Shown piece after piece: positions 3,195 to 55,821 of a stretch of 64,000 nt of DNA. Every line of letters starts with the position of its first letter. Position 1 is the stretch's first letter. The notes under the pieces were generated by a model. That model saw only the letters and a list, made by a program, of their open reading frames with translations, was not told the DNA's origin and did not search any database. A program made the translations under genes and the position numbers. The stretch spans positions 124,001-188,000 of IMG/VR virus record IMGVR_UViG_3300042302_000394. The stretch is one strand, 5' to 3'.

Positions 3195-3223
3195 AGTATA
3201 ACACACTTAATGATCTTTGTCAA
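3195..3223 (-). promoter_or_regulatory. sigma70-type promoter TTGACA-17-TATACT
   Basis: -10 ends 6 nt before ATG 3188, so the transcript is probably leaderless. Confidence 0.65.
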
Positions 3224-3453
3224 TACATTTTTTTAGGTAGTTCGTTATCGCGTAGTTTCTTTTGCCAACGAGATTTAGCTGCGCCTTTTTTTCGCTTTCT
3301 TTCGGTAGTTGGTTTTTCGTAAAACATTTTAGATCGGAGTGTTTCTAGTACTCCACTATCTTCTACCTTTTGTTTGAATTTTCTTAATGCCACATTTAAT
3401 GGCAAGTCGCCAACGATAACTTTATTACCGACTGCTTTATTTTGTTTGCTCAT
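3220..3453 (-). CDS. rpsU: 30S ribosomal protein bS21
   Basis: ALRKFKQKV...GVLETLRSKMFYEKPTTERKRKK signature; start overlaps clpX end. Confidence 0.9.
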   Translation of the reverse strand: MSKQNKAVGNKVIVGDLPLNVALRKFKQKVEDSGVLETLRSKMFYEKPTTERKRKKGAAKSRWQKKLRDNELPKKMY

Positions 3454-4666
3454 TTTTCTTTTTATCAAAAATCATTATGGCAGGTTTGCCATCAATCGTA
3501 TCTTTACTTATGCGAATAGCTGTTAAACCTCGAGCAACTAAGTCAACTGCATCAAATTGATATGGCAGCAATGTTTTTTCGATGATGTTTTTAAGTCCCC
3601 TAGCATTAGTTTTGAGATCTTTGGCTTTACGGGCAATTTCTTTTAGAGCTTGAATTTCAAATTCTAATTTAATACCATCTAACTCAAACATATACTGATA
3701 TTGTTTAACTGGGCTATTTTTAGTTTCAGTAAGGATATTGACTAGTTGATCCTCTGACAATTCGTCTACATTAGTAATAAGCCCAAATCGTCCTACAAAC
3801 TCGGGAATAAGACCGTATTTGATAAGATCTTTTGTACTGATGTCTTGTAGAACACTTGCGTCTTCGTCGATGTTGTCTACATTTGCATGGAATCCGACTG
3901 ACTTTGCACCCTTACGCTGTTTAATGATTTTGTCCAAGCCTACAAATGCTCCACCGCATATAAACAATATACCCCTAGTGTCAATTTCCTGCATATCACT
4001 TCCGGGATGTTTTCGTTTACCAGTCGATGGCACTCGCATAATCGATCCCTCGATCATTTTCAACAAGGCCTGTTGTACACCTTCTCCACTAACATCTCGG
4101 CTAATACTAACATTTTCGCCCTTCTTGGAAATTTTATCAATTTCGTCAATGTAGACAATGCCACGAGCCGCTTTATCAAGATCACCATCTGCTTCGTTGA
4201 TTAATCTTGTTAAAATGCTCTCAACATCATCACCGACATAACCTGCTTCTGTAATACCTGTGGCATCACATATGGCAAAAGGTAATTCTAAATATTGTGC
4301 AATTTTACGTGCCATCATGGTCTTACCGCAGCCCGTGGGTCCTAACAATAACACGTTGGTTTTCTCGAGCTCAATATCTTTACTAGGATTATTGATGCGT
4401 TTGTAATGCTGACTAACTGCAACACTAAGGCTAATTTTAGCATCATCCTGTCCTATAACGTACTCGTCAAGATAGTCTTTGATAGCAACAGGATTTAGAA
4501 GTTTAGAAGGTTCAGCAACTTTTTCTTTTTTGTCTTTTAGTATATCGACACAAAGGTCTACGCACTCGTTACAAATAGCCGCATGTTCACCTACGATCAG
4601 TTTCTCGACATCTTCTTTGCTCTTTCCGCAGAAGTCACAAGAGTGATCACTTTCTGTTTTGTTCAT
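3437..4666 (-). CDS. clpX: ATP-dependent Clp protease ATP-binding subunit ClpX
   Basis: C4 zinc finger, GPTGCGKT Walker A, GYVG pore loop, IVYIDEIDK Walker B, RDVSGEGVQQALLK, RKH loop, VGF (IGF-like) loop. Confidence 0.95.
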   Translation of the reverse strand: MNKTESDHSCDFCGKSKEDVEKLIVGEHAAICNECVDLCVDILKDKKEKVAEPSKLLNPVAIKDYLDEYVIGQDDAKISLSVAVSQHYKRINNPSKDIELEKTNVLLLGPTGCGKTMMARKIAQYLELPFAICDATGITEAGYVGDDVESILTRLINEADGDLDKAARGIVYIDEIDKISKKGENVSISRDVSGEGVQQALLKMIEGSIMRVPSTGKRKHPGSDMQEIDTRGILFICGGAFVGLDKIIKQRKGAKSVGFHANVDNIDEDASVLQDISTKDLIKYGLIPEFVGRFGLITNVDELSEDQLVNILTETKNSPVKQYQYMFELDGIKLEFEIQALKEIARKAKDLKTNARGLKNIIEKTLLPYQFDAVDLVARGLTAIRISKDTIDGKPAIMIFDKKKNEQTK

Positions 4667-5048
4667 TGAATGCCTTTTCTAAAAATGTTTCAATATTAGT
4701 TATCCGATCTTGGTTTATGTAGTGATAAACTGCGGACAGGCTTTCATCATCAACTTTATAGAATGTATTCTTTTTCCCTACAATGTATCCACTGAGTGAT
4801 CGAGTGACATCATTAACTTCGTTGAGATCGATGTATTTGTAATCGCATCTAGCCAACGCATGAAAGAGCCAAGGTAAATCTATTTCGTGATCGTAGAAGT
4901 ATACATTAATATGTTCTTCGATGTCTGATTCAGCTAACCATTTACTAACTAATTGTTGATCGGAATCGCTTAGATGCATAAACAGTACACTATACGAATC
5001 ATTTTCAAAAATGTCGGGAGGGGTGATGAGTGTAATTTTTCCGTTCAT
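4647..5048 (-). CDS. hypothetical protein
   Basis: 133-aa ORF overlapping both neighbours in an operon. Confidence 0.75.
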   Translation of the reverse strand: MNGKITLITPPDIFENDSYSVLFMHLSDSDQQLVSKWLAESDIEEHINVYFYDHEIDLPWLFHALARCDYKYIDLNEVNDVTRSLSGYIVGKKNTFYKVDDESLSAVYHYINQDRITNIETFLEKAFNEQNRK

Positions 5049-6322
5049 TATCTTCTCGCTCTGATATCTAATAAAAGATGTTCTGGAATATCTGCCATTG
5101 TAATTTCTTTGTTTCTAAGTTTTGTCAACCACTCGTTAAGTGTTGCTTCCTGTCTGCTAATTTCTGTATATTCTTCCTGACTAATAGCTTTAGCTGTTTT
5201 AGTCCATAGGCCACTATTTGACTGTTCTTCGTTTTGAACAAATAGCGGTTCTTCTAGAACCTGTAATTCTGTTTCGGGCGCAACTGCTGAGCGATCATTC
5301 ATTCTTTCTAGTTCGGGCTTATACACCATAGGTGCTAGATCTTTGAAATGTACAAACGGCTCTAACAGATAAGGATGGTGTGCTAAAATAGATGTGACAG
5401 TGGTTGCCGTGGAGACTACGTCATCAATCGGACCTGTTGGGCTGTCACCCTCCGTAGTCTCTTGTTGTTCTGTAACAGTAGGCGGCTCTGGGTCTACGAC
5501 CTCGGTGGTCCCTCCGGGGCTGTTACCCTCCACTAATTCCTTTTTACGGTCACGGAAATTCTGGAAACTGATCTGACTAGCTAACAATAAGATAACTGCC
5601 AACGGATCAAATACCACAATAAGAACAATAATTACCCATGTAACTGCTTTTTCCAAAATTGTAGGATCTGTTTCACCGTAGACAAACTGTGCAATATATT
5701 TTATCGGACCAACTTCTGCTTCAACCTTGCGTACTTCGGCTGCAATTGGCGCACGTTCTTCGCTAATAGAGGTAATAGTTTTCTGTTCGGCTTGGATCTC
5801 AGATTGAAGGCGGGCACGCTCTTTTTGTTGTGCGCGGCGTATAGCAACTGCCTTGTCGGCACCCGTTTCCGAACTGCTTCTTGCCATGACTTGGTCCACA
5901 GCCTCATCCATCTGTTTAAGCGCCTTACGGTTTGCATCTATATTTTCCTTTGCGGTTTTTATCTTTTCATCGTAGACTGCAATCTTACTCTGCACGTCAC
6001 CCGACACTAAACTTTGGTCACTGTGAGCCTGGCTGAGGAATCCAAAAATTCCCATCGAAGTAACGCCCATGAGAACAGCAATGGCAGTCAGCAGGTATGT
6101 TCTAACTAACCAGTGTGCAATTTTCCAATTTTGTTTGAGCCAAAGAGTAGCAGCAATCTTACCAATGCCCAATACAATGCCCATAATGATTACGGGAATT
6201 TGGGCGGCGGCAAAGATTGCAGTAAAGCCGATGATACTGTAGAATTCGGCGACTAGGCTGATAGCGAGACCGCTAAACAGTGCAAGATAGGCTATTAGTT
6301 TTTCATTTAATGTTACAGGCAT
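5048..6322 (-). CDS. membrane-anchored coiled-coil protein
   Basis: N-terminal hydrophobic helices, long coiled coil, further TM segment, acidic tail; TAAATA box 6 nt upstream. Confidence 0.75.
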   Translation of the reverse strand: MPVTLNEKLIAYLALFSGLAISLVAEFYSIIGFTAIFAAAQIPVIIMGIVLGIGKIAATLWLKQNWKIAHWLVRTYLLTAIAVLMGVTSMGIFGFLSQAHSDQSLVSGDVQSKIAVYDEKIKTAKENIDANRKALKQMDEAVDQVMARSSSETGADKAVAIRRAQQKERARLQSEIQAEQKTITSISEERAPIAAEVRKVEAEVGPIKYIAQFVYGETDPTILEKAVTWVIIVLIVVFDPLAVILLLASQISFQNFRDRKKELVEGNSPGGTTEVVDPEPPTVTEQQETTEGDSPTGPIDDVVSTATTVTSILAHHPYLLEPFVHFKDLAPMVYKPELERMNDRSAVAPETELQVLEEPLFVQNEEQSNSGLWTKTAKAISQEEYTEISRQEATLNEWLTKLRNKEITMADIPEHLLLDIRARR

Positions 6323-6331
6323 AGATGATAT

Positions 6332-6724
6332 TTATCGACGCATGTTGGCAATGGCCACAGCTTCCTCATCGCTAAAAATAGGCACAGCATTGCTCTTATG
6401 CATAGTACCGATACCTTTAATTTTAGTGCCTGTATAGACCTTAGCTGGTGCCAGTGCGGCAACGCCTGCTCCGGAATTTAAACTTTTGATGTGATGAGTA
6501 TTTGTCCTACCAACAGGTGTCGGTAATGAATATGACAATGTCTCTGCACTCATTGCTCGTTTACGCTTTTTGTCCTCTGCCTCTACTCCCCATTTCTTTT
6601 GGAGGGTGTTCCATTGCTCATCGAGCTCACGTGCCTTACGTGCTTCTTCAGCATTACGGAATTTGACTTTGCCCTTCTTCTTGCCGTTAAGACTAAGGCT
6701 AGGGTGATGCAGATGCATTGACAT
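6332..6724 (-). CDS. conserved phage hypothetical protein
   Basis: C-terminal YTGTKIKGIGTMHKSNAVPIFS motif recalled from T4-like phage hypotheticals. Confidence 0.7.
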   Translation of the reverse strand: MSMHLHHPSLSLNGKKKGKVKFRNAEEARKARELDEQWNTLQKKWGVEAEDKKRKRAMSAETLSYSLPTPVGRTNTHHIKSLNSGAGVAALAPAKVYTGTKIKGIGTMHKSNAVPIFSDEEAVAIANMRR

Positions 6725-7056
6725 TATGCAAGCTCAGTTTGAGGGAAGTTGATAGGATTGGCAGTATTTGATGCATGTGACTCAAATGTCTTTTGAACCT
6801 TGCTAGGGATACCTGTAAATCGTGCTACAGTACCATTGGGATTAATTTTAAGCGAACCGGCTACTACCCAAATTTGTTTGCCAGCTGGGTCAATACCTGC
6901 TAACTTTCGTACTACACCGTTAATCAATCCAGTTGCGGTATCCTTGCCTCTGTTCCATTGATATGTAGTATCTTTATTAAACCAAATCTGTTCATCTTTA
7001 GATTGGGCAATGCACCAAAGTTTCAATTGTGTAAGTGTATGTTCAGCATTATTCAT
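6724..7056 (-). CDS. hypothetical protein
   Basis: 110-aa ORF with GGAGG SD and TTGCAA-17-TATAGT promoter at 7087-7115. Confidence 0.75.
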   Translation of the reverse strand: MNNAEHTLTQLKLWCIAQSKDEQIWFNKDTTYQWNRGKDTATGLINGVVRKLAGIDPAGKQIWVVAGSLKINPNGTVARFTGIPSKVQKTFESHASNTANPINFPQTELA

Positions 7057-7130
7057 AGAACCTCCTAATGTGTATGTCTATGCACTACTATACAACAAAA
7101 CTGGTTTTATTGCAACCGAAAATTTTACCA

Positions 7131-7152
7131 AAAGAAAAGCACCCGAAGGTGC
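7131..7152 (-). terminator. intrinsic terminator after pstS
   Basis: GCACC-TTCG-GGTGC followed by TTTTCTTTT. Confidence 0.75.
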
Positions 7153-7199
7153 CAGTGCTGACTACTTATCACATTATACGCCGTCAGCCGGCGAGTATC

Positions 7200-8204
7200 T
7201 TATTTGATCTGTGTCCAAACACGTTCACGGATCTGCTTTGTCAAGCTGTCAGGCAATGCCACATAGTCTAGGTCGGCAGCATCTTTCTTACCATTCTTGA
7301 ATGCCCAATCAAAGAACTTTAATACTTCGTCACTAGTAGCTTTGTTAGCAGGAGTTTTGTACATGATGATAAAACTTGCTGAACTCACTGGCCATGCATT
7401 GGGATTCTTTTGATCCACGATGCTAAGTCCCATACCTGGAACACTGAACCAATCAGCACCATCTGCTGCGGCAGCAAATGTCAAGTCGTCCGGGCTTACA
7501 TACTTGCCACTCTTGTTTTGTAGTTGCAGGAATGTCATGTTGTTTTTCTTAACATAAGCATACTCTACATAACCAATTGAACCTTTGATTCTGTTCACAT
7601 TGGCAGCAACACCTTCATTGCCCTTGCCACCTACTGAAGTGGCTGCTGGCCACTTGACTGCGGCGCCACGACCCACACGTTGTAGCCACTCAGGGCTTAC
7701 TGTGGCCAAGTAATCGGTCCAGTTGAATGTTGTACCTGAACCATCAGCACGATGAACAATGGTGATGTTCTCGTTAGGTAGGTTCTTGCCTGGATTTAAT
7801 GCAGCCAGTTTAGGGTCATTCCACTTGGTGATGTTGCCCATAAACACTTCAGCCATAACTGGACCAGTGATGCGTAGTTCTCCGGGTTTGAATCCGTCTA
7901 AGTTTACCACAGGAACTGTGCCGCCAATGATAGCAGGAAATTGAACCTGTCCGTTCTTGTCCAAGTTCTCACCGCTTACCGGAGCATCTGTTGCACCAAA
8001 GTCAACGGTCTTTGCATTGATTTGACGAATGCCACCCGAACTTCCGATGCTTTGATAGTTCATGCCTGTACCTGTGGCTTTTTTGTAGCCTTCAGCCCAC
8101 TTGGCATAGATTGGGAATGGGAAGGTAGCTCCGGCACCTGTAATGTCTGCGGCTTGTGCTGACACTGCTACGGCTGCAAATAGAATAGCAAATAATTTTT
8201 TCAC
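7200..8204 (-). CDS. pstS: phosphate ABC transporter substrate-binding protein PstS
   Basis: Signal peptide, GAGATFP, YQSIGSSGG, VDFGATD, HRADGSGTT; start moved to GTG 8204 with AAGGAG SD. Confidence 0.95.
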   Translation of the reverse strand: MKKLFAILFAAVAVSAQAADITGAGATFPFPIYAKWAEGYKKATGTGMNYQSIGSSGGIRQINAKTVDFGATDAPVSGENLDKNGQVQFPAIIGGTVPVVNLDGFKPGELRITGPVMAEVFMGNITKWNDPKLAALNPGKNLPNENITIVHRADGSGTTFNWTDYLATVSPEWLQRVGRGAAVKWPAATSVGGKGNEGVAANVNRIKGSIGYVEYAYVKKNNMTFLQLQNKSGKYVSPDDLTFAAAADGADWFSVPGMGLSIVDQKNPNAWPVSSASFIIMYKTPANKATSDEVLKFFDWAFKNGKKDAADLDYVALPDSLTKQIRERVWTQIK

Positions 8205-8250
8205 TGTAAGTCTCCTTGTGTTTGTGATATTAATATTTAAACACAAAACG

Positions 8251-8268
8251 ATTACAATATGATTACAA
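8251..8268 (-). promoter_or_regulatory. putative Pho box
   Basis: TTGTAAT-N4-TTGTAAT direct repeat with 11-bp period upstream of pstS. Confidence 0.6.
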
Positions 8269-8286
8269 TTTTAAGAAATTTTTGCC

Positions 8287-8312
8287 AAAAAGAAACCCGC
8301 CGAAGCGGGTTC
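8287..8312 (-). terminator. intrinsic terminator after tmRNA
   Basis: GAACCCGC-TTCG-GCGGGTTTC followed by T-run. Confidence 0.85.
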
Positions 8313-8731
8313 TGCTATTTTGGGTGACAAGGTATAACTACCTCGTGGAGATCACGCTGCTAGGCGGTCTTCTCCAAAGTATGCATCGTTTGCATTTAGG
8401 TTTTTTGCTTCTGCGACCGGGTCACCCCAATCCTAACGGCTTCTACATTGCCGGACTGTCCATTTCAATACTCTTGACCCAATCGATCCTGTGTCAGGCC
8501 CATTATAAAACATACTCACCCGAATGGACATTGTCACCTCCGCCTACTGTCGGAAATATGTTTTATGGTGGACCTGGCGGGCACTGCCCCCGCGTCTTGA
8601 ATCCTTTTCTGTCTACTTCATACAGTCTTAACTTTTAACAGACTTCCCAGGGTGTGTTTGGCCTCTGCTAAGCCTGCAGGAATCTCACCTACTGCATATC
8701 TGCTACGCAAACTTGCCCCTGCGAAAGTCTA
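8313..8731 (-). ncRNA. ssrA: circularly permuted (two-piece) tmRNA; tag (A)ANDAYFGEDRLAA at 8352-8393
   Basis: T-arm, CAGGUCC-A-CCA end (8593-8566) upstream of 5' GGGCCUG (8501); G3-U70 alanine pair; P2 pairings; tag ORF ending LAA. Confidence 0.92.
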
Positions 8732-8737
8732 TTATTT

Positions 8738-8767
8738 ATTATACAACAGGATTGCCTTGACTGTCAA
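8738..8767 (-). promoter_or_regulatory. sigma70-type promoter TTGACA-18-TATAAT for tmRNA
   Basis: Consensus hexamers immediately upstream of the tmRNA precursor. Confidence 0.75.
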
Positions 8768-9369: not shown

Positions 9370-9370
9370 T

Positions 9371-9580
9371 TTAAACTTTCTTAGTTGATCGAATATTTTG
9401 AGCTTGCTTACCTTTGTCACCTTCAGTTAGATCAAATTCTACTTCTTGTCCAACTGCCAGTGTCTTATATCCTTCCATTTGGATTTGACTAAAGTGTGCA
9501 AACACATCATCAGTTGTACCATCTGGAACGATAAATCCAAAACCTTTTGAATTATTAAACCATTTAACTTTTCCCTGCAT
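9371..9580 (-). CDS. cold-shock domain protein
   Basis: GKVKWFN..KGFGFI (RNP1), DVFAHFS (RNP2). Confidence 0.95.
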
Positions 9581-11409: not shown

Positions 11410-11842
11410 CTTTCTTCTCAGGTATCTCGCACAGTGCTTCTAGAGTTTTATAATGCTGGTATGCTTTCTGGAGTGCCTCAAAGTGCTCTAACTTGGCCGG
11501 ATCCGGAGTTAGGATAGCCAGTCTCTTTTCAATAGTAGTTAACAGTTCTCCAAGGCTTCGGCCCTTCCATTTAATGTCGCCATCAAACTTAGCATCGCTA
11601 GTAACGTGTAGCCCTGCGTGTGACATGCTTGCTACGCTGGAATTAGCAGTTGTAAAAACATAAGGGTTAGTTGCCCATGTTCCGTTACCCCCTGCTCCAG
11701 TAGATACATAATAAGATCCCGAAGCTCCTGTTGCACCAGTTGATGAAAAAGAGTAGTTCATCGTATTGCTAATGTCTATTGACATGGTATTGTCGAGTGG
11801 ATCATCTAAAGAGATGGATAGTTCATCATCACTATTAGCCAT
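11396..11842 (-). CDS. hypothetical protein
   Basis: 148-aa ORF overlapping both neighbours. Confidence 0.7.
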   Translation of the reverse strand: MANSDDELSISLDDPLDNTMSIDISNTMNYSFSSTGATGASGSYYVSTGAGGNGTWATNPYVFTTANSSVASMSHAGLHVTSDAKFDGDIKWKGRSLGELLTTIEKRLAILTPDPAKLEHFEALQKAYQHYKTLEALCEIPEKKDDGS

Positions 11843-12059
11843 TTAGTTTTGCCTTTAGTTCGGTGAAGCCGCCAACTAGCTCCCCATCTAAAAAGATTTG
11901 GGGAACTGCTCTAGCTGTTGGTACAGCTTCTAATAATTCTTCTTTGGTATAACCATCACCTATTTTCTTTTCTTCAAAGGCAATGCCTTTCTGTTTTAGT
12001 AATGCCTTTGCTTGATCGCAGTAGGGGCAATGGTACTTAGACCACACAATCGCTTTCAT
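11835..12059 (-). CDS. glutaredoxin
   Basis: CPYC active site, VPQIF, VGGF. Confidence 0.93.
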   Translation of the reverse strand: MKAIVWSKYHCPYCDQAKALLKQKGIAFEEKKIGDGYTKEELLEAVPTARAVPQIFLDGELVGGFTELKAKLNG

Positions 12060-12084
12060 TTTATATTTCCTTTAAACTGATAAT

Positions 12085-12411
12085 TCATACTCTAAAACTT
12101 TCACCGCATCCACATCGGTCACGTTCGTTAGGATTCTTAAATTCAAATCCTTCATTAAGTCCGTTGCGTACCCAGTGTACTTCCAATCCATTAACATACG
12201 GATAAGATTTTCCATCTACCCAAACTTTAACACCGTTGCTTTCGTAGACAAATTGATCGCGAGTTACTGGAACATGATCTACAAATTCTAACGTATAAGC
12301 CAAGCCAGAACACCCTGTGGTTTTTACACCGATACGTATCCCTAGCCCTTTGCCTCTTCGTTCTAGATGTTTCTTAACTTTAGCGGCAGCTTGTTCCATT
12401 AATGTTATCAT
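12085..12411 (-). CDS. iscA: iron-sulfur cluster assembly protein IscA
   Basis: GCSGLAY, CGCGESF. Confidence 0.92.
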
Positions 12412-12786
12412 TTAATGTTTTTTACGATAATCTTCAACAGCAGCTTTAATAGCATCTTCAGCCAATATACTGCAATGTATCTTAACGGGCGGTAGTGCTA
12501 ATTCTTCAGCAATCTGGCTATTACGAATGTTACTAGCATCATCCACATGCATTCCTTTAACCATCTCAGTGACAAGACTGGAGCTGGCGATTGCTGAACC
12601 ACATCCATATGTCTTGAAACGAGCATCTCTAATAATACCATTTTCATCTACCTTTATCTGTAATTTCATTACGTCACCGCAAGCAGGTGCACCGACCATG
12701 CCTGTACCTACAGTGTCGTCTATTTCAAACTTACCTACATTACGAGGGTTTTCGTAATGGTCAATTACTTTATTTGAGTATGCCAT
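12412..12786 (-). CDS. iscU: Fe-S cluster scaffold IscU
   Basis: MAYSNKVIDHYENPRNVG, PACGDVM, YGCGSAIASSS, LPPVKIHCS; start moved to 12786. Confidence 0.95.
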   Translation of the reverse strand: MAYSNKVIDHYENPRNVGKFEIDDTVGTGMVGAPACGDVMKLQIKVDENGIIRDARFKTYGCGSAIASSSLVTEMVKGMHVDDASNIRNSQIAEELALPPVKIHCSILAEDAIKAAVEDYRKKH

Positions 12787-12790
12787 AGTT

Positions 12791-13891
12791 TTATAAATCC
12801 GGTAATTCGTCGTAACTAACTGCATCACTCATAACACCGATGACATAGTTAGTACTTTCGTTTTCTTGCAAGGCGGTCTGTTTCTTATTGATATTAACGT
12901 GTTTGTTGAACCAAGGGATAGGACTAAACTTAGGATGCTCTCCTTGATACTTAATACCAATTTCCTTTAAACGCACAAACGCAGTGTAGTCAACAAAGTC
13001 AGACAGGATAGTAGCATTAAGGCCAATAACTGGTCCTAGCTTGAACAAATAATCTGCCCACTCTTTTTCTTCTCGGATGACATCCATATAGAGGGTATAG
13101 ACTTCTTCTGCACATTCTTCTTCAAGTTTTACAAAGTCTGTATCATCTTTAGTCACGTTGTTGATCAGCCAGGCAGTCCATTCTGTATGTAACAACTCAT
13201 CTTGTAGAATCAAACTGATGATGTTACCGTTGCCAATATAGATCTTATTCTCTACCATTGCTAGACTTGTGGCAAAACTTACCATGAAGCGTAGAGCCTC
13301 CAATGCATATGATGCGTGTAAGGCCAACCATATGGCTCGCTTATGAGTATGGAGTTCAATTTCCTCGCCCAACTCTTTACGACAGTTGAGCTGATGAAGA
13401 TCCTCATAGTAGCGACCAATGTTAGCAGCCATGCCAACAATTTCAGCCGTGTCGTGAATCTTGTTAAATTCTTCTTTAGGTACGCCATAGACATTACGAA
13501 TAATGTGACTGTAAGATTTTGAGTGAATATTTGTTTCAAAGAAACTCCAATTGCTTACTAATGCTTCTAGTTCAGGAATACTGATAACAGGTTGAAATAC
13601 TTGATTAGGTGCGCGACCTTGAATACTATCTAATGCTGTCTGACGCAGTAAGTTACTAGTAAAAATATGCTTAACTGCATCACTTGCATCCTTGTGATCC
13701 ATCTTGTCTTTAGTAAGACTGATCTCTTCTGGGACCCAAAAGAATCCACGAGCAAGTTCTTCGTACTTGGTAATCTTAGGGTACTTGACTTCTTCAAAGC
13801 GTTGCACAGTAACTGGACCAGCTGGATCCAGAAACATTGTACGTTTTAGATAGTTTGTTTGTTTTGATAGATTGTATTGTTCTTTGCTCAT
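12791..13891 (-). CDS. nrdB: ribonucleotide reductase class Ia beta subunit
   Basis: FFWVPEEISL, ETNIHSKSY, EALRFMVSF, DELLH, QENESTNY. Confidence 0.95.
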   Translation of the reverse strand: MSKEQYNLSKQTNYLKRTMFLDPAGPVTVQRFEEVKYPKITKYEELARGFFWVPEEISLTKDKMDHKDASDAVKHIFTSNLLRQTALDSIQGRAPNQVFQPVISIPELEALVSNWSFFETNIHSKSYSHIIRNVYGVPKEEFNKIHDTAEIVGMAANIGRYYEDLHQLNCRKELGEEIELHTHKRAIWLALHASYALEALRFMVSFATSLAMVENKIYIGNGNIISLILQDELLHTEWTAWLINNVTKDDTDFVKLEEECAEEVYTLYMDVIREEKEWADYLFKLGPVIGLNATILSDFVDYTAFVRLKEIGIKYQGEHPKFSPIPWFNKHVNINKKQTALQENESTNYVIGVMSDAVSYDELPDL

Positions 13892-13903
13892 GTGTGGTTC
13901 TCT

Positions 13904-16234
13904 TTATAATTTACAGGCTTCGCAATCATCATCGTACAATACTACATTATCTGCGGCATTGATTGCAATGGGGATAGATATGTTAGTGTTTGTTACATCT
14001 GCCTTTGCACCCATTTTATTAATTAAACTGTAATAGATTGTCTTAATGCCCCATTTGTAGGCTAACATTAAATTTTTAGCAATTAATGTACCCGGCACTT
14101 TTCCTCCAGCAAAATGTGCCGGGTTGTAGAATGTATTAGTGCTCAGGCTTTGATCAATGTAGGCAGCAAGCACAGCACTGGTCTTCAAATAGTCAACACA
14201 GTCCTTCTGATCCCACATCAACTGATAACGATTCTTTAGACGTTTGTACTCTGGCACGACTTGTACAAACGATCCAGCTTTCGATTCCTTTACAGAAATC
14301 AATTCCATCGGCATTTCAATTCCGTTGGTAGAGTTTAACACAACTGAACTGGACTCTACTGGTGCCACGGCCATTAAGGTAGCATTACGAATACCGTACT
14401 TGATCATTCTTTCACGTAATGGTTCCCAATCCATACTAGGAGTAAAGTCAGTTAATTCGTTAACTCCAGGTTTACGACGCTCCCAGGGAAACACTCCCTT
14501 ACCATAGTAAGTGTACTGACTACGTCCGCATGGGCCACGTTCTTGGGCAAGCTCGACACTCATTTCGGTTAGGTAGTATGCTTGGTGTTCCGTCCAACGC
14601 TTAACTTCAGCTAATGCTTCATCGGTCCCGTATTTGAAACTTTTACGTGCATGCCAGTAAGCAAGATTAGTAATGCCAACTCCAAGTGGTTCGAAGTCTT
14701 GATTAGCGAGTTTACTTTGTACACTTAAAAAATCTTGATATTGTAGTAAATTACTTAAACTTCGGACCAGCACACGACAGGCTTTTCTCATCTCTTGTGG
14801 GTTACGGAACGCTCCCCAGTTGATGCTGCCAAGAGTGCAAAGAGCAATTCGTCCCTCTGGATCTTCAATTCTCTGGAAAGGGCGGGTGGGTAAAAGTATC
14901 TCCTGGCATAAGTTTGATTGATATATTGGATCCAAGGTTGTATCAAATGGACCCTGGTTAATAACGTTGTCGATATTGACAAGATATATACGCCCCGTAT
15001 CAGTTCGCTCTTTAAGGATTCCATTTTTGAATATCTCATCCGCTGATACAACTTTCTTTTTCTTTGTCTTATCTTGTTCATATTGTAGATACAACTTTTC
15101 AAATTCTGCTGAGTCTCTGTAGTAGGCTTCGTATAGATCCGGAACTTCTGCTGGATCAAACAAACTCATTGTTTCGCCACGCTTATACCGATTCCAGAAC
15201 ATAGCATTAACAACAACACTATAGTCCATTTGGCGTACCCGCACTTCCTCGGTACCTTGGTTGTTCTTTAGAACAATAAGGTCCTCAAACTGATAATGCC
15301 AGATGGGAAAAGTTACTGTACAGCTAGCATTACGAATACCGCCTTGACTGCAACTGCGAAGGTCTGCAAACCATTTCTTTAAGAATGGTATCATACCCGT
15401 ATGCTTGATCTCACCGTTGCGAATAGGGGCCCCTAAGGGGCGGATTCTGCCAATTTCGAGACCAATTCCGGCTCGTTTTGAAGCATATTTGGCCATCATT
15501 TCGCCTGCGGCAAAGATCGAATCAAGAGTATCATCACTACTAATAAGTACGCAACTACTGAATTGTTTAGTTGTGGTGCCAAGGCCAGCAAGGACAGGGG
15601 TAGCTAAAGTAAAGTGGCCATCACTTGCACACTCATAATATTCCTTTACTAATTTTAGTCTTTTATCCTTAGATTCATTGTGAAAAGCTGTTGCGGCGGC
15701 AATAGCATAACGAACCTGAGGAGTTTCATAGATTATACCTGTAGCACGATTTTGTACTAGATACTTTTCAGCCAATTGTGCCACGGCTGCATAGGTATAG
15801 TTTTCATCTTTGCTATGATCAATGAATAGGTCAATAATATCCCATTCTTCTTGTGTATACCATTCTAGCAGATCACTAGTATACATACCTAGCTCTACAT
15901 TCTTTTTAACAATGCTGTATAGTTTAGGAGGATCATACTCTCCGTATACTTCTTTACGTAACATACTGACTTTTTGCCTGCCAGCTACCTGTTGATAGTT
16001 TACATTATTAATTTCTGGATTTTCTGTTTCGTCGATCAAGTCGACCATTGCTTTTAACAGTAGTTCGTCGATGGTTTTAGTGGTCATTCCGTCGTGTAGT
16101 TCAATCTGTGCCTTGATCTCAATCATGGATGGACTTACTCCATCTATACCTCTACACGAATATGCTACCTGTCTTTGTATCTTTGCTATGTCTAAGGGGA
16201 CACGATTCCCATTACGTTTAACCACTGTAATCAT
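13904..16234 (-). CDS. nrdA: ribonucleotide reductase class Ia alpha subunit
   Basis: N-terminal ATP cone, FSSCVLI, QSNLCQEI, C-terminal CEAC; uninterrupted. Confidence 0.96.
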   Translation of the reverse strand: MITVVKRNGNRVPLDIAKIQRQVAYSCRGIDGVSPSMIEIKAQIELHDGMTTKTIDELLLKAMVDLIDETENPEINNVNYQQVAGRQKVSMLRKEVYGEYDPPKLYSIVKKNVELGMYTSDLLEWYTQEEWDIIDLFIDHSKDENYTYAAVAQLAEKYLVQNRATGIIYETPQVRYAIAAATAFHNESKDKRLKLVKEYYECASDGHFTLATPVLAGLGTTTKQFSSCVLISSDDTLDSIFAAGEMMAKYASKRAGIGLEIGRIRPLGAPIRNGEIKHTGMIPFLKKWFADLRSCSQGGIRNASCTVTFPIWHYQFEDLIVLKNNQGTEEVRVRQMDYSVVVNAMFWNRYKRGETMSLFDPAEVPDLYEAYYRDSAEFEKLYLQYEQDKTKKKKVVSADEIFKNGILKERTDTGRIYLVNIDNVINQGPFDTTLDPIYQSNLCQEILLPTRPFQRIEDPEGRIALCTLGSINWGAFRNPQEMRKACRVLVRSLSNLLQYQDFLSVQSKLANQDFEPLGVGITNLAYWHARKSFKYGTDEALAEVKRWTEHQAYYLTEMSVELAQERGPCGRSQYTYYGKGVFPWERRKPGVNELTDFTPSMDWEPLRERMIKYGIRNATLMAVAPVESSSVVLNSTNGIEMPMELISVKESKAGSFVQVVPEYKRLKNRYQLMWDQKDCVDYLKTSAVLAAYIDQSLSTNTFYNPAHFAGGKVPGTLIAKNLMLAYKWGIKTIYYSLINKMGAKADVTNTNISIPIAINAADNVVLYDDDCEACKL

Positions 16235-51355: not shown

Positions 51356-51357
51356 AA

Positions 51358-51648: not shown

Positions 51649-51650
51649 TG

Positions 51651-51953: not shown

Positions 51954-51983
51954 AATGTGTATTTACTCGTAAGTTAACACTGA

Positions 51984-54683
51984 TTAGACTATGTTGATAA
52001 CATTACCCATTACGCCATGGATAGTGCATTGATAATACAGTGTAGATGGTGCATTCATTGGCACAGTAAATGTCTGTGTGCCTGCTTGACTGCCTGAAAC
52101 GCCGTCAGTATAAGCTGCGCCGCCGTCACTTACTCTAATAGCAAAGGGATGACTGCCACCCGTAGTGTTGATAAAAGTATAGGTAAATCCTCTGTATAGA
52201 TATAGCACAGGATCATTAGTGTTGCCTGCAACTACACCGGGTCCGCTGAATACGTAATCACTAGTTCCAGTAGATGATACTGACCACGTAATAGAAGCAC
52301 TAGGGCCAGTTGGCCCTGTATCGCCTTGTGGTCCTTGTGGTCCAGTTACTCCTTGTGGACCAGTTGGACCTACGTTTCCTTGAACGCCTTGTGAACCACT
52401 TGGCCCAGTTGGCCCTGATGGTCCAATAAATCCTATGCCGTTTGCTCCACTAGGTCCTGATGGCCCGGTTGGCCCGGTGGGTCCTGTGGCCCCGTCGACT
52501 CCTGTGGGTCCCGATGGCCCAGTAGGACCCGAAGGTCCTGCTACTGCGCTTGCCGGTCCTGCTGGTCCAGTGGCGCCTGATGGGCCAGTAGGTCCTGTAT
52601 CACCAGATGGTCCTTGTGGACCAGTTGGGCCTGCACCTGTAGGTCCTGTATCGCCTGGAATTCCTTGAGCACCTGATGGTCCAGTTGGACCAGTTGGACC
52701 TACAGCTCCTTGAACACCCTGTGGGCCAGTTGGACCCACGTCTCCTTGAACGCCTTGTGGACCTTGCGGGCCACCGGATGGGCCAGTTGGACCCACGTCT
52801 CCTTGAACGCCTTGTGGACCAGCAGGGCCAGTTGCACCAGTAGGCCCCTGTGGACCTACGTCTCCTTGAACGCCTTGTGGACCTTGCGGGCCACCGGATG
52901 GGCCAGTTGGACCCACGTCTCCTTGAACGCCTTGTGGACCAGCAGGGCCAGTTGCACCTACCGATCCTTGACCACCGGCAGGGCCAGTTGGACCCACGTC
53001 TCCTTGAACGCCTTGTGGACCAGCAGGACCAGTTGGACCTACAGCTCCTTGACCACCAGCAGGTCCTTGTGGGCCAGTTAGTCCTTGTGATCCGGTACTT
53101 GCAACTACAATACCATTTACACTTATATCACCTTCGAGTGTAACTTGCAAAGGAATACCGCCAAAATATACGGTGCTAGTCCCAACATACAAACTACGCC
53201 ATTGTTTATCAGCACTACCTAAATCAAATCTTATATCATCTGTTGGAATTAAACTGTTTTGCACTTGTAAGTCTGTACCTGTTGCCAGTGACCCTATCTT
53301 TGTAAACTTAAATGTTCCTGTTGATGAAAGCTCCGATGAAACTATGCTAGTAGTAGTAGTTCCGGAGTTAGTAAAAAACATAAACTTGGCAGTGGGGAAA
53401 GTCCCTGTGTTTTCAACTCGAACGTGTATTCTTGCGGGAGCCATGAATTGTGTTGGAGTTCGAGTTGAAAACACAAGCTCTGCAATATTATCATTTTCTA
53501 ACAAAGGTGTTGGTGCAGTTGCTGTTCCTCTAGTTCTAACCCATCTAAAATCTAATGCATCTGGTTGATCAAAGTGTTGTGAAAATGACCAACCTGCGGC
53601 ACCTGGTATAAAAAGTTCTCTAGACCAAGCAACACTTGTACCAGTATTAGAGGTAGCACCACCAATAAAAATTACCTGACTATCGAAATTGTAAGACATT
53701 GCTAAACTAGGAGAAATTTCTGTATTATTAGTTGTTCCGTAGAGTGCAAATCTTCCAAATTGACCAGGATTTACTCTTCCTTGTCTAATACCATCTATAC
53801 TAATTCCGGTTGTTGGATCTACAGATACTTGGTAATTGTCAAAGTACATGGATGTAGATGCTACATGTATCGTTCCACTGTTTAGGTATAGATTGCCTTG
53901 TCCAGTTAGTTCTAACTTTTTAACCCAGGTAGTTTCCTGTCCGGTGGTAGGGACTGTATAGGTTTCAAATGAATTGTCAGCAACACCGATACCGAATAAT
54001 GTCTGTGAATCACCCGGTCCCGTATCCCCTAGAAATAAAACTTGATTTATGTTTGCATCTTCATTTACTAAAACTGTTGATTGCTCGTATGCCGAGGCGA
54101 ATCCGTATGCTCGATATTCACCTCCGGTAAATGGAGTTGATTCTAAGTGACGTATTCTACTATAATTGTCACTATCATAACCTCCAACAACAATAGCTTG
54201 ACGAATGGTAAGTGTGTTAACATAGACGGTATTCCATCTACGTAGGTCAGATCCTAAGTTAAATTGGTTACTAGCATTGGGTAATACATTACCGGAAGTT
54301 ACTAAGTTTCCAAAGCTATTTAGACTAGTAACAAAAGATCCGTTAACCAGAGACGACGTGGTTGAAAATCCGCCCCCGGTACCGGCAGGGCCAGTTGGGC
54401 CAGTCTCACCTTGTGGCCCAGCAGGGCCGGTAGGACCGGCAGCTACAGTAAATTGAACAATATTTAATGCATCATTATATACAGCAGTCATGCCACTATG
54501 ACTACTATGAACTAATAGCGTAGCACCAGCGTCTGCTACTGCTTCTGTAAAATCAGTACCAGTTGTTCCTAGCAGTGTGGCAATTTCTGTAAAATTTTGA
54601 TTTACTTTGATAAATGCAGATCGTATGCTGTCACCGTCGCCTGAGTTTGCATTAGAACCTGTATTGATAACTTGAATGGTCAT
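51984..54683 (-). CDS. baseplate-anchored fibre: T4 gp9/gp10-like N-terminus, Pro-rich collagen, C-terminal cupredoxin-like domain
   Basis: [26 protein letters not shown]; GPT/GPQ triplets; SHPF...[11 protein letters not shown]. Confidence 0.75.
52738..52958. repeat. 120-bp-period direct repeat in collagen tract
   Basis: 52738-52838 identical to 52858-52958. Confidence 0.8.
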
Positions 54684-54685
54684 TT

Positions 54686-54973
54686 TTATAATCCTGCTAG
54701 TTTTCTAATTGACTCTAACTGATCCGGTTTCTCTAGAATCTTGTCATAATCTTGCATAGTGAGTACACCCTTGTTCTTAATAGCCAAAATGTTAGTGATA
54801 ACAAAGTGCAGGTCTGCATCCGATTTTACGTCCTCGCGGGCTAGTTCTAAAATTCGAGTAAGTAATGGAATATCCAATGTTACTGTATCAACAGCATCTG
54901 CGGACTCCTTTACTGTAATATTTGGTTTGGCAGGGTTTACAATGCCGGAATGTATAAAAGTTGAGTGACTCAT
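54686..54973 (-). CDS. hypothetical protein
   Basis: 95 aa; TAAATA 5 nt upstream. Confidence 0.7.
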
Positions 54974-54985
54974 ATGACTATTTAG

Positions 54986-55014
54986 TTGCTCTTTATGGTA
55001 AATGACTGTATAAT
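54986..55014 (+). promoter_or_regulatory. sigma70-type promoter TTGCTC-17-TATAAT
   Basis: Upstream of plus-strand HNH gene. Confidence 0.6.
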
Positions 55015-55049
55015 AAATACTGGGTCACAACAACCTTTGAAAGTAGTAA

Positions 55050-55562
55050 ATGAGTTCGACATTATTGTTAAATGCAGACGGAGCCCCGATTTCTTGGCTA
55101 CCGTTGAGCACAATTTCCTGGGAAGAATCTATTAAGTTCATAGTGCTTGAAAAAGCCACTGTGTTAGATGTCTACGATAATTGGGTCGTGCATAGTGCAA
55201 ACTGGGAAACACAGGTTCCTGCCGTTATGATTCTTCGCGAGTACGAAAAGCGCAAGACTGCAATTCGTTATTCCAAACATAATGTGTTCCTTCGTGATGG
55301 CTATACATGCCAGTACTGTGGGGATGATGTAAGCCGTAAAACAGCCACGTTAGACCACGTGCTGCCAGTTAGTCACGGTGGTAAGACTACCTTTGAAAAC
55401 ACTGTCTGCGCCTGCGCGAGCTGTAATGCAAACAAGGGTAACGACAAGAAGATTGTGCCAAAGCACAAGCCAGTTAAGCCCACCTACTATCAATTAGTAG
55501 ACAAGCGTAGACAGCAAAAGTGGGATATACCACACCCATCGTGGGCCAACTACTTAGGATAA
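55050..55562 (+). CDS. HNH endonuclease (McrA-like)
   Basis: RDGYTCQYCG...TLDHVLPVSHGG...NTVCACASCNANKG. Confidence 0.9.
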   Translation: MSSTLLLNADGAPISWLPLSTISWEESIKFIVLEKATVLDVYDNWVVHSANWETQVPAVMILREYEKRKTAIRYSKHNVFLRDGYTCQYCGDDVSRKTATLDHVLPVSHGGKTTFENTVCACASCNANKGNDKKIVPKHKPVKPTYYQLVDKRRQQKWDIPHPSWANYLG

Positions 55563-55565
55563 AAG

Positions 55566-55590
55566 AAAAGCACCGTAAGGTGCTTTTTTT
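55566..55590. terminator. bidirectional intrinsic terminator
   Basis: AAAAGCACC-GTAA-GGTGCTTTTTTT. Confidence 0.85.
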
Positions 55591-55602
55591 ATGACCCAAA
55601 TT

Positions 55603-55821
55603 TTATTTTGAACGATATACTATACGACATTTAGTTAAGTCGTATGGGCTCATTTCTACCCTAACTCTATCCCCTAACAGTATTTGAATTCTGTTCTGTC
55701 GCATCTTGCCCGAGATGAATCCCAGAACTGCGGAACCTTGTTCCAACCTTACCCGAAACATTGCGTTGGGTAGTACTTCTTCGATCCTGCCCTCAAGGCT
55801 GATCATATCTTCTTTAGCCAC
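55603..55821 (-). CDS. infA: translation initiation factor IF-1
   Basis: [22 protein letters not shown]...[28 protein letters not shown]. Confidence 0.95.

What the first reader, a model, noticed from the sequence alone, without database searches (positions are those of the whole stretch)
3220..55821. Candidate phage-run ribosome-rescue and proteolysis circuit (tmRNA + ClpX + bS21 + IF-1 + Csp + exoribonuclease)
Seen: tmRNA, ClpX, bS21, a cold-shock protein and a DEDDh exoribonuclease lie within about 7 kb, and IF-1 is in the same window. The tag ends in LAA, the established ClpX degron, and phage ClpX retains the loops that read it. No smpB, sspB or clpP is visible here. Inference: the phage supplies both the tagger and the reader, either to free ribosomes stalled on degraded host mRNA or to counter host anti-phage systems that cleave tRNA, mRNA or rRNA.
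Basis: inference. Interest (0 to 1): 0.75.

Follow-up and report, generated by a model that had tools for sequence, protein, structure and literature searches.

The report
Giant lake phage tmRNA–ClpXP–bS21 genes
A giant freshwater phage really does carry its own ribosome-rescue RNA (tmRNA), a complete ClpXP protease, ribosomal protein bS21, IF-1 and a cold-shock protein, but these are known phage accessories that boost a host pathway rather than forming a closed phage-run circuit, and ClpX is most tightly tied to bS21, not to the tmRNA.

Summary
They are a two-piece tmRNA (tag ANDAYFGEDRLAA), a full-featured ClpX, bS21 overlapping the clpX stop, Csp, a DEDDh exonuclease and IF-1.

- **Added by me:** the same 208-kb contig encodes a genuine ClpP outside the window. 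SmpB, SspB and ArfB are absent, also from a complete 322-kb relative. The tmRNA is the betaproteobacterial two-piece type, with its own consensus sigma-70 promoter and terminator.
- **For the circuit idea:** 38 of 50 related viral records with this ClpX also carry the tmRNA. Tags vary in the middle, but 32 of 33 end in [L/M/V/I]AA. The ClpX pore-1, pore-2, RKH and ClpP-docking loops are kept.
- **Against a dedicated circuit:**
  - The tmRNA is missing at four separate tips of the clade's ClpX tree, while ClpX-bS21 stays.
  - Other ClpX phages lack a tmRNA, and other tmRNA phages lack ClpX.
  - The tags match cellular tags.
- **Strongest linkage:** the invariant pairing is ClpX-bS21 (76 of 80 loci). 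It recurs in a Pseudomonas jumbo phage, and as ClpX-IF-3-bS21 in Atu_ph07-like phages.

This is a new member of a known kind, of moderate interest.

The parts
2658..3206 (-). DEDDh 3'-5' exonuclease (Rv2179c-like). It has its own 11/12 sigma-70-like promoter at 3223-3195 and a terminator at 2650-2625.
   Evidence: PF16473 128.9 bits; phrog_255 'exonuclease' 170.8 bits; promoter and terminator. It lies within about 1.3-8 kb 3' of ClpX in 70 of 80 related loci. Whether the substrate is RNA or DNA was not tested.
3220..3453 (-). Ribosomal protein bS21 (77 aa from the ATG at 3453). It overlaps the clpX stop by 17 nt.
   Evidence: PF01165 51.5 bits; phrog_21469. It sits directly 3' of ClpX in 76 of 80 related loci.
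3437..4666 (-). ClpX unfoldase with a C4 zinc finger, Walker A/B, pore-1 GYVG, pore-2, RKH loop and a VGF ClpP-docking loop.
   Evidence: Pfam zf-C4_ClpX, AAA_2 and ClpB_D2-small. E=4e-123 to solved ClpX structures. Motif conservation. Phage-specific lineage in the tree.
4647..5048 (-). Conserved 133-aa acidic protein directly 5' of clpX (overlap 20 nt), with a flavodoxin-like fold and unknown role.
   Evidence: Present in 78 of 80 loci. AF2 pLDDT 90.5. Only weak matches to nucleoside-deoxyribosyltransferase-like, TIR and receiver folds. Not SmpB-, SspB- or ClpS-like.
5048..6322 (-). Conserved 424-aa protein that reads, by eye, as a membrane protein with a coiled-coil stretch, in the same gene string.
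   Evidence: Present in 74 of 80 loci. Weak DUF4407 match. Sequence.
6332..6724 (-). Conserved 130-aa basic protein (phrog_27048) in the same gene string.
   Evidence: Present in 76 of 80 loci. phrog_27048 99 bits. AF2 model of low confidence (pTM 0.29): helices, a disordered stretch and a small hairpin.
8291..8681 (-). Two-piece (circularly permuted) tmRNA gene of betaproteobacterial type.
- Acceptor piece: T-arm from 8593, ACCA at 8569-8566.
- Intervening segment: 8565-8502.
- Coding piece: starts GGGCCUG at 8501 (G3:U70).
- Tag ORF: 8393-8352.
   Evidence: RF04321 101.9 bits at 8352-8627. RF01850 full-length, 59 bits. Relatives score up to 201 bits for RF01850. Compensatory acceptor- and T-stem changes occur with G3:U70 kept.
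8352..8393 (-). Tag reading frame: ANDAYFGEDRLAA followed by a stop.
   Evidence: Read from the sequence. Tags could be read in 33 of 34 relatives (none in L114); 32 of them start AN and end [L/M/V/I]AA, and one ends LLAANA.
8738..8767 (-). Consensus sigma-70 promoter (TTGACA-18-TATAAT, 12/12) upstream of the tmRNA.
8293..8312 (-). Terminator hairpin followed by a T-run. It is also the 3'-terminal helix of the beta_tmRNA model.
9371..9580 (-). Cold-shock protein (CSD) with its own 12/12 sigma-70 promoter at 9629-9601.
   Evidence: PF00313 100.6 bits; promoter. It lies within 10 kb of ClpX in only 22 of 80 loci.
55603..55821 (-). Translation initiation factor IF-1, next to an HNH endonuclease gene and the tail-fibre block.
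   Evidence: PF01176 87.8 bits. Present in 7 of 12 large related records, including the complete one.

Best explanation
The window belongs to a giant (about 320-360 kb) freshwater myophage with T4-like tail genes. It shows a clade-conserved set of genes for taking over translation and protein turnover.

**Shown**
- A complete two-piece tmRNA gene of betaproteobacterial type, with its own consensus sigma-70 promoter and terminator. It encodes the tag ANDAYFGEDRLAA.
- A full-featured ClpX of a phage-specific lineage.
- A genuine ClpP about 86 kb upstream of the window.
- bS21 overlapping the clpX stop codon.
- IF-1, Csp and a DEDDh exonuclease.
- No SmpB, SspB or ArfB.

**Inferred mechanism**
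1. Host AlaRS charges the phage tmRNA, using the G3:U70 identity pair.
2. Host SmpB and EF-Tu bring it to ribosomes stalled on truncated mRNAs. Such mRNAs should accumulate during infection.
3. The tmRNA frees the ribosome and adds an AND...[L/M/V/I]AA degron.
4. ClpXP, both the phage's and the host's, reads and destroys the tagged product.

The phage therefore raises the capacity of an existing host pathway rather than running a closed circuit of its own.

ClpX's most constrained partner is bS21 (IF-3 in a sister lineage). ClpX therefore probably has a further, possibly primary, role tied to ribosome or initiation takeover.
For: **tmRNA integrity**
- Covariance-model scores.
- G3:U70, ACCA and compensatory stem changes.
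- Its own promoter and terminator.

**Degron**
- The C-terminal degron is conserved while the interior of the tag varies.

**ClpX and ClpP**
- ClpX loops: GYVG, pore-2 and [I/V]GF are invariant in the 28 clade sequences aligned, and RKH is present in 73 of 80 loci.
- ClpP scores 255 bits and carries Ser/His/Asp motifs by eye. ClpP is also present in the complete relative.
- Predicted ClpX-ClpP docking goes through ClpX residues 256-265, the VGF loop. The tool's verdict is weak support: score 0.51, best of 3 controls 0.00. That mark was reached by 51 of 78 solved complexes and 2 of 108 mismatched pairs. At 0.60 or under it was reached by only 5 of those 78, and by all 4 mismatches that passed.

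**Co-occurrence and synteny**
- 38 of 50 related records carry both tmRNA and ClpX.
- The tmRNA lies on the same strand, 2.9-9.6 kb from ClpX, in 50 of 80 loci.

**Precedents**
- Phage G has ClpP-ClpX plus a tmRNA (PMC12484599).
- Phosso and AP-J-162 have both (PMC11242549).

**Expression hint**
- Lake metatranscriptome contigs 85-99% alike cover the region. The tmRNA bin is the deepest in 2 of 4 runs. This is weak evidence, because the runs were chosen using that gene.
Against: - There is no SmpB, SspB or ArfB in the contig or in the complete relative.
- The tmRNA is absent at four separate tips of the clade's ClpX tree, with ClpX-bS21 kept. These include records of 66, 113 and 149 kb.
- Atu_ph07 and Pseudomonas phage 30-3 have ClpX but no tmRNA.
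- Melnitz-type phages have a two-piece tmRNA and bS21 but report no Clp gene (PMC9004378).
- The tags equal cellular betaproteobacterial tags, for example ANDERFALAA, so no phage-specific reader is needed.
- The tmRNA and the clpX operon have different promoters, and clpP lies far away.
- There are no time-resolved expression data, and the host is unknown.
Confidence: 0.5

Rival explanations
1. The genes are independent accessories. The selected role of phage ClpX(P) is tied to bS21 and translation initiation, or to degrading particular host or phage proteins. Examples would be remodelling 30S subunits so that phage bS21 replaces the host copy. The tmRNA simply supplements host trans-translation and relies mainly on host proteases.
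For: - ClpX-bS21 overlap occurs in 76 of 80 loci.
- The same overlapping pair occurs in Pseudomonas jumbo phage 30-3. There the bS21 gene is unannotated, the RKH loop is lost and there is no tmRNA.
- A ClpX-IF-3-bS21 cluster occurs in Atu_ph07 and Phosso, whose ClpX is sister to this clade.
- The tmRNA is repeatedly absent while ClpX-bS21 is kept.
- Clp protease families were tabulated within 10 genes of phage bS21 (n = 50 and 47) in PMC9723584.
Against: - The RKH loop, which by established ClpX biochemistry is needed for ssrA-tag recognition, is retained in 73 of 80 clade members.
- No substrate is known, and gene adjacency alone does not show a physical or functional link.
- The ClpX-tmRNA co-occurrence of 76% is still high.
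Confidence: 0.3
2. Counter-defence. The tmRNA, tRNA set, ClpXP and exonuclease exist to neutralise host systems that cleave tRNA, mRNA or rRNA.
For: - There are 40 tRNA genes elsewhere in the contig.
- The tmRNA would rescue ribosomes stalled on cleaved mRNA, by general knowledge of trans-translation.
Against: - No RtcB was found. The T4-type RNA ligase search also found nothing, but its control did not ring, so it is uninformative.
- Nothing in the locus is specific to defence.
- The same genes are explained by ordinary host shut-off.
Confidence: 0.1
3. The tmRNA gene is not functional as a tagger. It would be a leftover of integration at a host ssrA site, or a decoy that titrates host SmpB.
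For: - Phages often integrate in ssrA.
- A tRNA-like-domain-only tmRNA is known in mycobacteriophage DS6A (PMC4131195).
Against: - The gene is full length, with both pieces, a promoter and a terminator.
- The tag frame is conserved, with a constrained C-terminus, in 32 of the 33 relatives where a tag could be read.
- The stems carry compensatory changes.
Confidence: 0.05

Closest known systems
Bacterial trans-translation plus ClpXP (E. coli and Caulobacter ssrA/SmpB, SspB, ClpXP)
   Same: - tmRNA with G3:U70, a resume codon and an AND...LAA tag.
- ClpX with zinc finger, GYVG, pore-2, RKH and IGF-type loops.
- ClpP with Ser/His/Asp motifs seen by eye.
   Different: - SmpB and SspB are not encoded.
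- clpP and clpX are about 90 kb apart instead of adjacent.
- clpX is fused in an operon with rpsU (bS21).
- The ClpX lineage branches outside the sampled bacterial ClpX.
Bacillus phage G (ClpP-ClpX gp257/258 plus a one-piece tmRNA)
   Same: A giant phage with ClpXP and a complete tmRNA, and no SmpB reported (PMC12484599).
   Different: - Phage G's ClpX nests within Bacillota ClpX, so it looks host-derived.
- clpP and clpX are adjacent.
- The tmRNA is one-piece and about 220 kb away, and its tag ends QVA.
- No bS21 was found.
Methylophilales phage Melnitz and pelagimyophages (PMC9004378)
   Same: Aquatic T4-like myophages with a complete two-piece tmRNA downstream of an early promoter, plus bS21. 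The hypotheses of 'maintaining hijacked machinery' or 'tagging host proteins' have already been voiced for them.
   Different: - Their tmRNA is of the alphaproteobacterial type.
- No Clp gene is reported.
- Their genomes are about 141 kb.
- No glutamine riboswitch was detected here.
Agrobacterium phage Atu_ph07, Sinorhizobium phages Phosso and AP-J-162
   Same: - Their ClpX is sister to this clade's (SH-aLRT 92).
- In Atu_ph07 and Phosso, ClpX is followed directly by a translation-initiation gene, with bS21 1.4-7 kb further on.
- Phosso and AP-J-162 carry a tmRNA (PMC11242549).
   Different: - The neighbour is IF-3 rather than bS21.
- The RKH loop reads RKN.
- Atu_ph07 has no detectable tmRNA.
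- They encode several more Clp paralogues (PMC6102473).
Pseudomonas jumbo phage 30-3 (Wroclawvirus; I take it to be PA5oct-like)
   Same: - clpX with an overlapping downstream 68-aa gene that is bS21 (57.5 bits). It is annotated only as hypothetical.
- A QueD gene lies beside clpX, as QueD lies beside clpP here.
   Different: - The ClpX RKH loop is lost.
- There is no tmRNA.
- ClpX is only 44% identical.
Freshwater bS21-encoding phages of Chen et al. 2022 (PMC9723584) and huge phages of Al-Shayeb et al. 2020 (PMC7162821)
   Same: - Large aquatic phages with bS21, IF-1, tmRNA and Clp protease genes.
- Clp protease families were already counted within 10 genes of bS21.
   Different: - Those clades place bS21 among capsid genes and are assigned to Bacteroidetes hosts.
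- No ClpX-bS21 or ClpX-tmRNA functional link was proposed.

Membership tests
Two-piece (permuted) tmRNA | Match to the curated covariance model at or above its cut-off | tested here: met
   RF04321 101.9 bits against a cut-off of 47.
Two-piece tmRNA, betaproteobacterial type (RF01850) | Match at or above the gathering score of 84 bits | tested here: not met
   The window scores 59 bits over the full model length. Most relatives pass, at up to 201 bits. The window copy is therefore a divergent member of a beta-type family.
Two-piece (permuted) tmRNA | tRNA-like domain: 7-bp acceptor stem with G3:U70, a T-arm and a 3' ACCA on the upstream piece | tested here: met
   GGGCCUG pairs with CAGGUCC-ACCA, with T-stem GCGGG/CCCGC. 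Relatives show compensatory variants and keep G3:U70.
Two-piece (permuted) tmRNA | Resume codon and a short tag frame ending in a hydrophobic residue plus AA, then a stop | tested here: met
   ANDAYFGEDRLAA followed by a stop. 32 of the 33 relatives with a readable tag end in [L/M/V/I]AA.
Two-piece (permuted) tmRNA | Processing of the precursor into two base-paired RNAs | not testable with these tools
   Only assembled metatranscriptome contigs of relatives were available.
Self-sufficient trans-translation system (tmRNA + SmpB) | SmpB encoded alongside the tmRNA | tested here: not met
   PF01668 is absent from the contig and from 5 large relatives, including the complete 322-kb genome. The controls were positive.
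ClpX | N-terminal C4 zinc finger plus an AAA+ module with Walker A and B | tested here: met
   PF06689 55 bits, PF07724 103 bits, with GPTGCGKT and IDEIDK motifs.
ClpX | Substrate-reading loops: pore-1 GYVG, pore-2 and RKH | tested here: met
   GYVG, SRDVSGEGVQ and KRKH are present. RKH is present in 73 of 80 clade members.
ClpX | IGF-type loop and a ClpP partner | tested here: met
   A VGF loop lies at residues 257-259, and ClpP is in the genome. Predicted docking through residues 256-265 is weak support only: score 0.51, best of 3 controls 0.00. The mark was reached by 51 of 78 solved complexes and 2 of 108 mismatched pairs. At 0.60 or under it was reached by only 5 of those 78, and by all 4 mismatches that passed.
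ClpX | ATP-dependent degradation of ssrA-tagged substrate | not testable with these tools
   This needs biochemistry.
ClpP | Family profile match and the Ser-His-Asp triad | tested here: met
   PF00574 255 bits. The motifs GQACSMG, MIHQP and a downstream Asp are seen by eye in the 194-aa ORF.
SspB adaptor | SspB domain protein encoded | tested here: not met
   PF04386 is absent from the contig and from 4 large relatives. The conserved ClpX neighbour o133 has an unrelated flavodoxin-like fold.
Ribosomal protein bS21 | Family profile match above the cut-off | tested here: met
   PF01165 51.5 bits against a cut-off of 27. Incorporation into ribosomes was not tested.
IF-1 and cold-shock protein | Family profile matches above their cut-offs | tested here: met
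   PF01176 87.8 bits and PF00313 100.6 bits.
DEDDh exoribonuclease (Rv2179c-like) | Family profile match, and RNA as the substrate | tested here: inconclusive
   PF16473 scores 128.9 bits. PHROGs calls the family only 'exonuclease'. Whether it acts on RNA or DNA cannot be told from the sequence.

The most novel reading that the evidence does not exclude
The translationally coupled ClpX-bS21 pair (ClpX-IF-3-bS21 in the sister lineage) is a phage device for remodelling host ribosomes. Phage ClpX(P) would extract or destroy the host's exchangeable 30S initiation components, such as host bS21, IF-3 or hibernation factors, so that phage bS21 takes their place. The tmRNA would then clear the ribosomes that stall during the switch. 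This would be a new job for a viral AAA+ unfoldase, shared by at least three jumbo-phage lineages.
Probability: 0.12. Interest if true: 0.8.

Novelty: new member of a known kind. Interest (0 to 1): 0.45.

Why it matters
This clade gives a large natural data set for asking why giant phages carry ribosome-rescue and proteolysis genes. At least 236 viral loci hold this ClpX, all of the best 80 come from the clade, and there is one complete 322-kb genome.

It shows that the tmRNA works only with host SmpB. It shows that the tag's degron is under constraint. It also shows that the gene most tightly bound to phage ClpX is bS21.

That last point turns a loose list of 'translation genes in huge phages' into a concrete and testable pairing. 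The question it raises is whether a viral unfoldase helps a viral ribosomal protein into host ribosomes.

Tried and rejected
- **ARAGORN:** finds no tmRNA in the window or the contig. Only covariance models detect the permuted gene.
- **Megablast:** 9 kb of the region against deposited phages found nothing, so there is no cultured close relative.
- **Host or donor inference from ClpX:** failed. All bacterial ClpX are about 50-55% identical, and the clade branches outside them.
- **Host naming from tmRNA:** only partial. The best cellular match is an unnamed 2.0-Mb genome whose tmRNA locus is about 40% GC, in the GTDB order that holds Burkholderiales. Variovorax and four other members lack the two-piece type.
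- **Cryptic SmpB or SspB among the conserved ClpX neighbours:** rejected. o133 folds as a flavodoxin-like domain. o130 gives a low-confidence helical, disordered model.
- **One-piece tmRNA in relatives lacking the permuted one:** none above the cut-off.
- **T4 late-promoter motif TATAAATA:** not enriched.
- **RNA-run search with the 6-kb stretch:** none was listed.
- **Laid metatranscriptome contigs:** they come from relatives and cannot show processing or timing.
- **RKH loop against tmRNA presence:** 48 loci have both, 25 have RKH only, 2 have tmRNA only and 5 have neither. The data are too few and not independent.
- **IF-3 and ArfB/RF-1:** absent.
- **RtcB and T4-type RNA ligase:** RtcB was not found. 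The T4-type RNA ligase search found nothing, but its control did not ring, so it is uninformative.

Full report
**Context.** The window is bases 124001-188000 of a single 207,813-bp IMG/VR viral contig. The contig has 40.8% G+C and is estimated to be 58% complete. Window bases 25-55 kb encode large tail-fibre and baseplate-wedge-like proteins typical of T4-like myophages. A block of 39 tRNA genes lies at contig 83-92 kb, with one more near the contig's end. Near-identical DNA is held by many lake-water metagenome runs. No deposited phage matches at the DNA level.

**Observation.**
- Rfam finds a permuted tmRNA at 8352-8627 on the - strand (RF04321, 101.9 bits, cut-off 47). ARAGORN finds nothing.
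- A focused scan aligns 8291-8681 to the whole betaproteobacterial two-piece model (RF01850). The score of 59 bits is below its cut-off of 84.
- Reading the sequence gives these features:
  - T-stem GCGGG/CCCGC.
  - Acceptor 3' strand CAGGUCC followed by ACCA, ending at 8566.
  - A 64-nt intervening segment.
  - The 5' strand GGGCCUG from 8501, which gives G3:U70.
  - A resume codon GCA at 8393.
  - The frame ANDAYFGEDRLAA followed by a stop.
- A 12/12 sigma-70 promoter lies at 8767-8738. A terminator at 8312-8293 closes the gene.
- Pfam confirms the protein genes:
  - bS21, ClpX (zinc finger plus AAA+) and Csp.
  - IF-1.
  - The Rv2179c-like DEDDh exonuclease at 2658-3206.
- ClpX aligns end to end with solved ClpX structures (E=4e-123). 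It keeps GYVG, the pore-2 loop, KRKH and a VGF ClpP-docking loop.

- The contig encodes a genuine ClpP at C1:38184-38729 (255 bits). By eye it has Ser, His and Asp motifs. It sits beside a QueD-like gene.
- SmpB, SspB, ArfB/RF-1 and IF-3 were not found in the contig. They were also not found in large relatives, including G028, a complete 322,512-bp genome with terminal repeats.
- G028 has ClpP, ClpX, the tmRNA and IF-1.
- A fold of two ClpP copies with ClpX 56-409 placed ClpX residues 256-265 (the VGF loop) in the cleft between the ClpP copies. The tool's verdict is weak support: score 0.51, best of 3 controls 0.00. That mark was reached by 51 of 78 solved complexes and 2 of 108 mismatched pairs. 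At 0.60 or under it was reached by only 5 of those 78, and by all 4 mismatches that passed. The result may also reflect memory of solved ClpXP.

**Relatives.**
- 236 IMG/VR stretches encode a relative of this ClpX. The best 80 are 63-100% identical.
- Of 50 records searched whole, 38 have a permuted tmRNA above the cut-off.
- Most of these tmRNAs match the beta-type model over its full length, at up to 201 bits.
- A tag could be read in 33 of the 34 fetched relatives (none in L114). Examples are ANDNVYALAA, ANDEMFALAA, ANDSQFALAA, ANDELYSMAA, ANDDAYLMAA, ANDERFALAA and ANDDYFGEVRLAA. All 33 begin AN, and 32 end [L/M/V/I]AA. One ends LLAANA.
- Acceptor stems vary by compensatory changes (GGGCCUG, GGGGAUG, GGGCCCG, GGGCCAG) with G3:U70 kept. 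The intervening segment ranges from 57 to 183 nt.
- Three of 151 sampled cellular genomes of the order holding Burkholderiales carry the same RNA type. Their tags are ANDEHFAIAA, ANDERFALAA and ANDENFALAA. The closest genome has 2.0 Mb, and its tmRNA locus is about 40% G+C.
- The phage tags are therefore ordinary cellular-type degrons.

**Linkage.**
- Across the 80 loci, these genes are nearly fixed:

| Gene and position | Loci (of 80) |
|---|---|
| bS21, directly after ClpX, mostly overlapping its stop | 76 |
| 133-aa protein, directly before ClpX | 78 |
| 424-aa protein read as membrane/coiled-coil | 74 |
| 130-aa basic protein | 76 |
| exonuclease | 70 |

- The tmRNA is on the same strand, 2.9-9.6 kb from ClpX on its 5' side, in 50 loci. 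Csp is within 10 kb in 22 loci and PstS in 19.
- On the ClpX tree, the clade is one group (support 100). It is sister to Atu_ph07/Phosso (92) and lies outside the sampled bacterial sequences (96). Phage G's ClpX sits inside Bacillota. This is a quick tree, and its long branches need caution.
- Absence of the tmRNA maps to four separate tips of that tree. These include records of 66, 113 and 149 kb with no one-piece tmRNA either.
- Outside the clade:
  - Pseudomonas jumbo phage 30-3 has clpX overlapped by an unannotated bS21 gene (57.5 bits). It has lost the RKH loop and has no tmRNA.
  - Atu_ph07 and Phosso have ClpX, then IF-3, then bS21 within 1.4-7 kb. A tmRNA is present only in Phosso.
  - Phage G has adjacent ClpP-ClpX and a distant one-piece tmRNA.

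**Conserved neighbours.** The 133-aa protein gives a confident model (pLDDT 90.5) with a flavodoxin-like fold. It has only weak likeness to nucleoside-deoxyribosyltransferase-like, TIR and receiver domains. The 130-aa protein gives a poor model. Neither resembles SmpB, SspB or ClpS.

**Expression hints.**
- The tmRNA and Csp each have perfect sigma-70 promoters, and the exonuclease has an 11/12 one. The string from o110 to bS21 has only weak matches. Timing may therefore differ.
- Contigs 85-99% alike from four lake metatranscriptomes cover parts of the region. The tmRNA bin is the deepest in two of them. The runs were picked with that gene and may contain DNA, so this is weak evidence.

**Literature.** Each element is known.

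| Known element | Source |
|---|---|
| tmRNA, SmpB, bS21 and IF-1 in huge phages | PMC7162821 |
| A complete two-piece tmRNA behind an early promoter in phage Melnitz, with the same two functional guesses | PMC9004378 |
| ClpX and ClpP in group 2.2 jumbo phages | PMC7824862, PMC6102473 |
| ClpXP plus tmRNA in phage G | PMC12484599 |
| tmRNA, ClpX, bS21 and IF-3 in AP-J-162 | PMC11242549 |
| Clp protease families counted near phage bS21 | PMC9723584 |

None of the papers I retrieved proposes a tmRNA-ClpX circuit or a ClpX-bS21 link.

**Conclusion.** The most likely reading is that the phage adds capacity to the host's trans-translation and ClpXP pathway. It does this with a host-type tmRNA that needs host SmpB, and with its own complete ClpXP. 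The pairing is common but dispensable. The evolutionarily tight unit is o133-ClpX-bS21, which points to an additional role for ClpX in ribosome or initiation takeover. The anti-defence reading has no specific support.

Noticed in passing
window 3437-3453; L199:4211-4417: The bS21 gene overlaps the clpX stop codon here and in most relatives. The same overlapping pair occurs in Pseudomonas jumbo phage 30-3, where the 68-aa gene is annotated only as a hypothetical protein.
   Followed up: yes
L196 (Atu_ph07) and L197 (Phosso): ClpX is followed directly by IF-3, with bS21 1.4-7 kb further on the same strand. The published accounts linked this ClpX to topoisomerase and replication instead.
   Followed up: partly
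window 4647-5048: A 133-aa acidic protein is fixed directly 5' of clpX in 78 of 80 loci. Its confident model is flavodoxin-like, with weak likeness to NDT, TIR and receiver folds. Its function is unknown.
   Followed up: partly
window 5048-7056: A 424-aa protein that reads as membrane/coiled-coil, a 130-aa basic protein (phrog_27048) and a 110-aa protein form a conserved string with clpX-rpsU. There is no strong promoter or terminator between them.
   Followed up: partly
L082-L115 (tmRNA loci of relatives): - Two T-loop types occur within one phage family (UUCGAUU and GGCAGUG).
- The intervening segment ranges from 57 to 183 nt.
- A subclade that includes the window has a 13-residue tag (...YFGExRLAA) instead of 10 residues.
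- One relative's tag ends LLAANA.
   Followed up: partly
G000:C1:36684-40229 (L001): ClpP lies beside a QueD-like 6-carboxytetrahydropterin synthase and a cytidylyltransferase-like gene. In Pseudomonas phage 30-3, QueD lies beside clpX.
   Followed up: no
G000:C1:83070-92415: A block of 39 tRNA genes covers 19 of the 20 amino acids. One more tRNA-Arg lies near the contig's end.
   Followed up: no
window 11835-16234: Glutaredoxin, IscA-like and IscU/NifU-like Fe-S assembly genes sit directly beside the class I ribonucleotide reductase subunits. IscU and IscA are present in only 14-16 of 80 relatives.
   Followed up: no
window 7200-8246: A PstS-like periplasmic phosphate-binding protein gene lies between the clpX string and the tmRNA. 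It is within 10 kb of ClpX in 19 of 80 relatives.
   Followed up: no
window 828-1367 and 55050-55562: Two HNH endonuclease genes are present. The first occurs in only 6 of 80 relatives and the second abuts IF-1. They are likely mobile homing endonucleases.
   Followed up: no
window 8492: Two metatranscriptome contigs of one run end here and continue into Illumina adapter sequence. This is 9 nt inside the predicted 5' end of the coding piece (8501). It may mark an RNA end, but the contigs come from relatives.
   Followed up: no
window 25425-54683: There are very large tail-fibre and baseplate-wedge-like genes (up to 1540 aa) with collagen-like repeat matches. There is also an 1122-aa protein combining glycosyltransferase-like and methyltransferase-like parts.
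   Followed up: no
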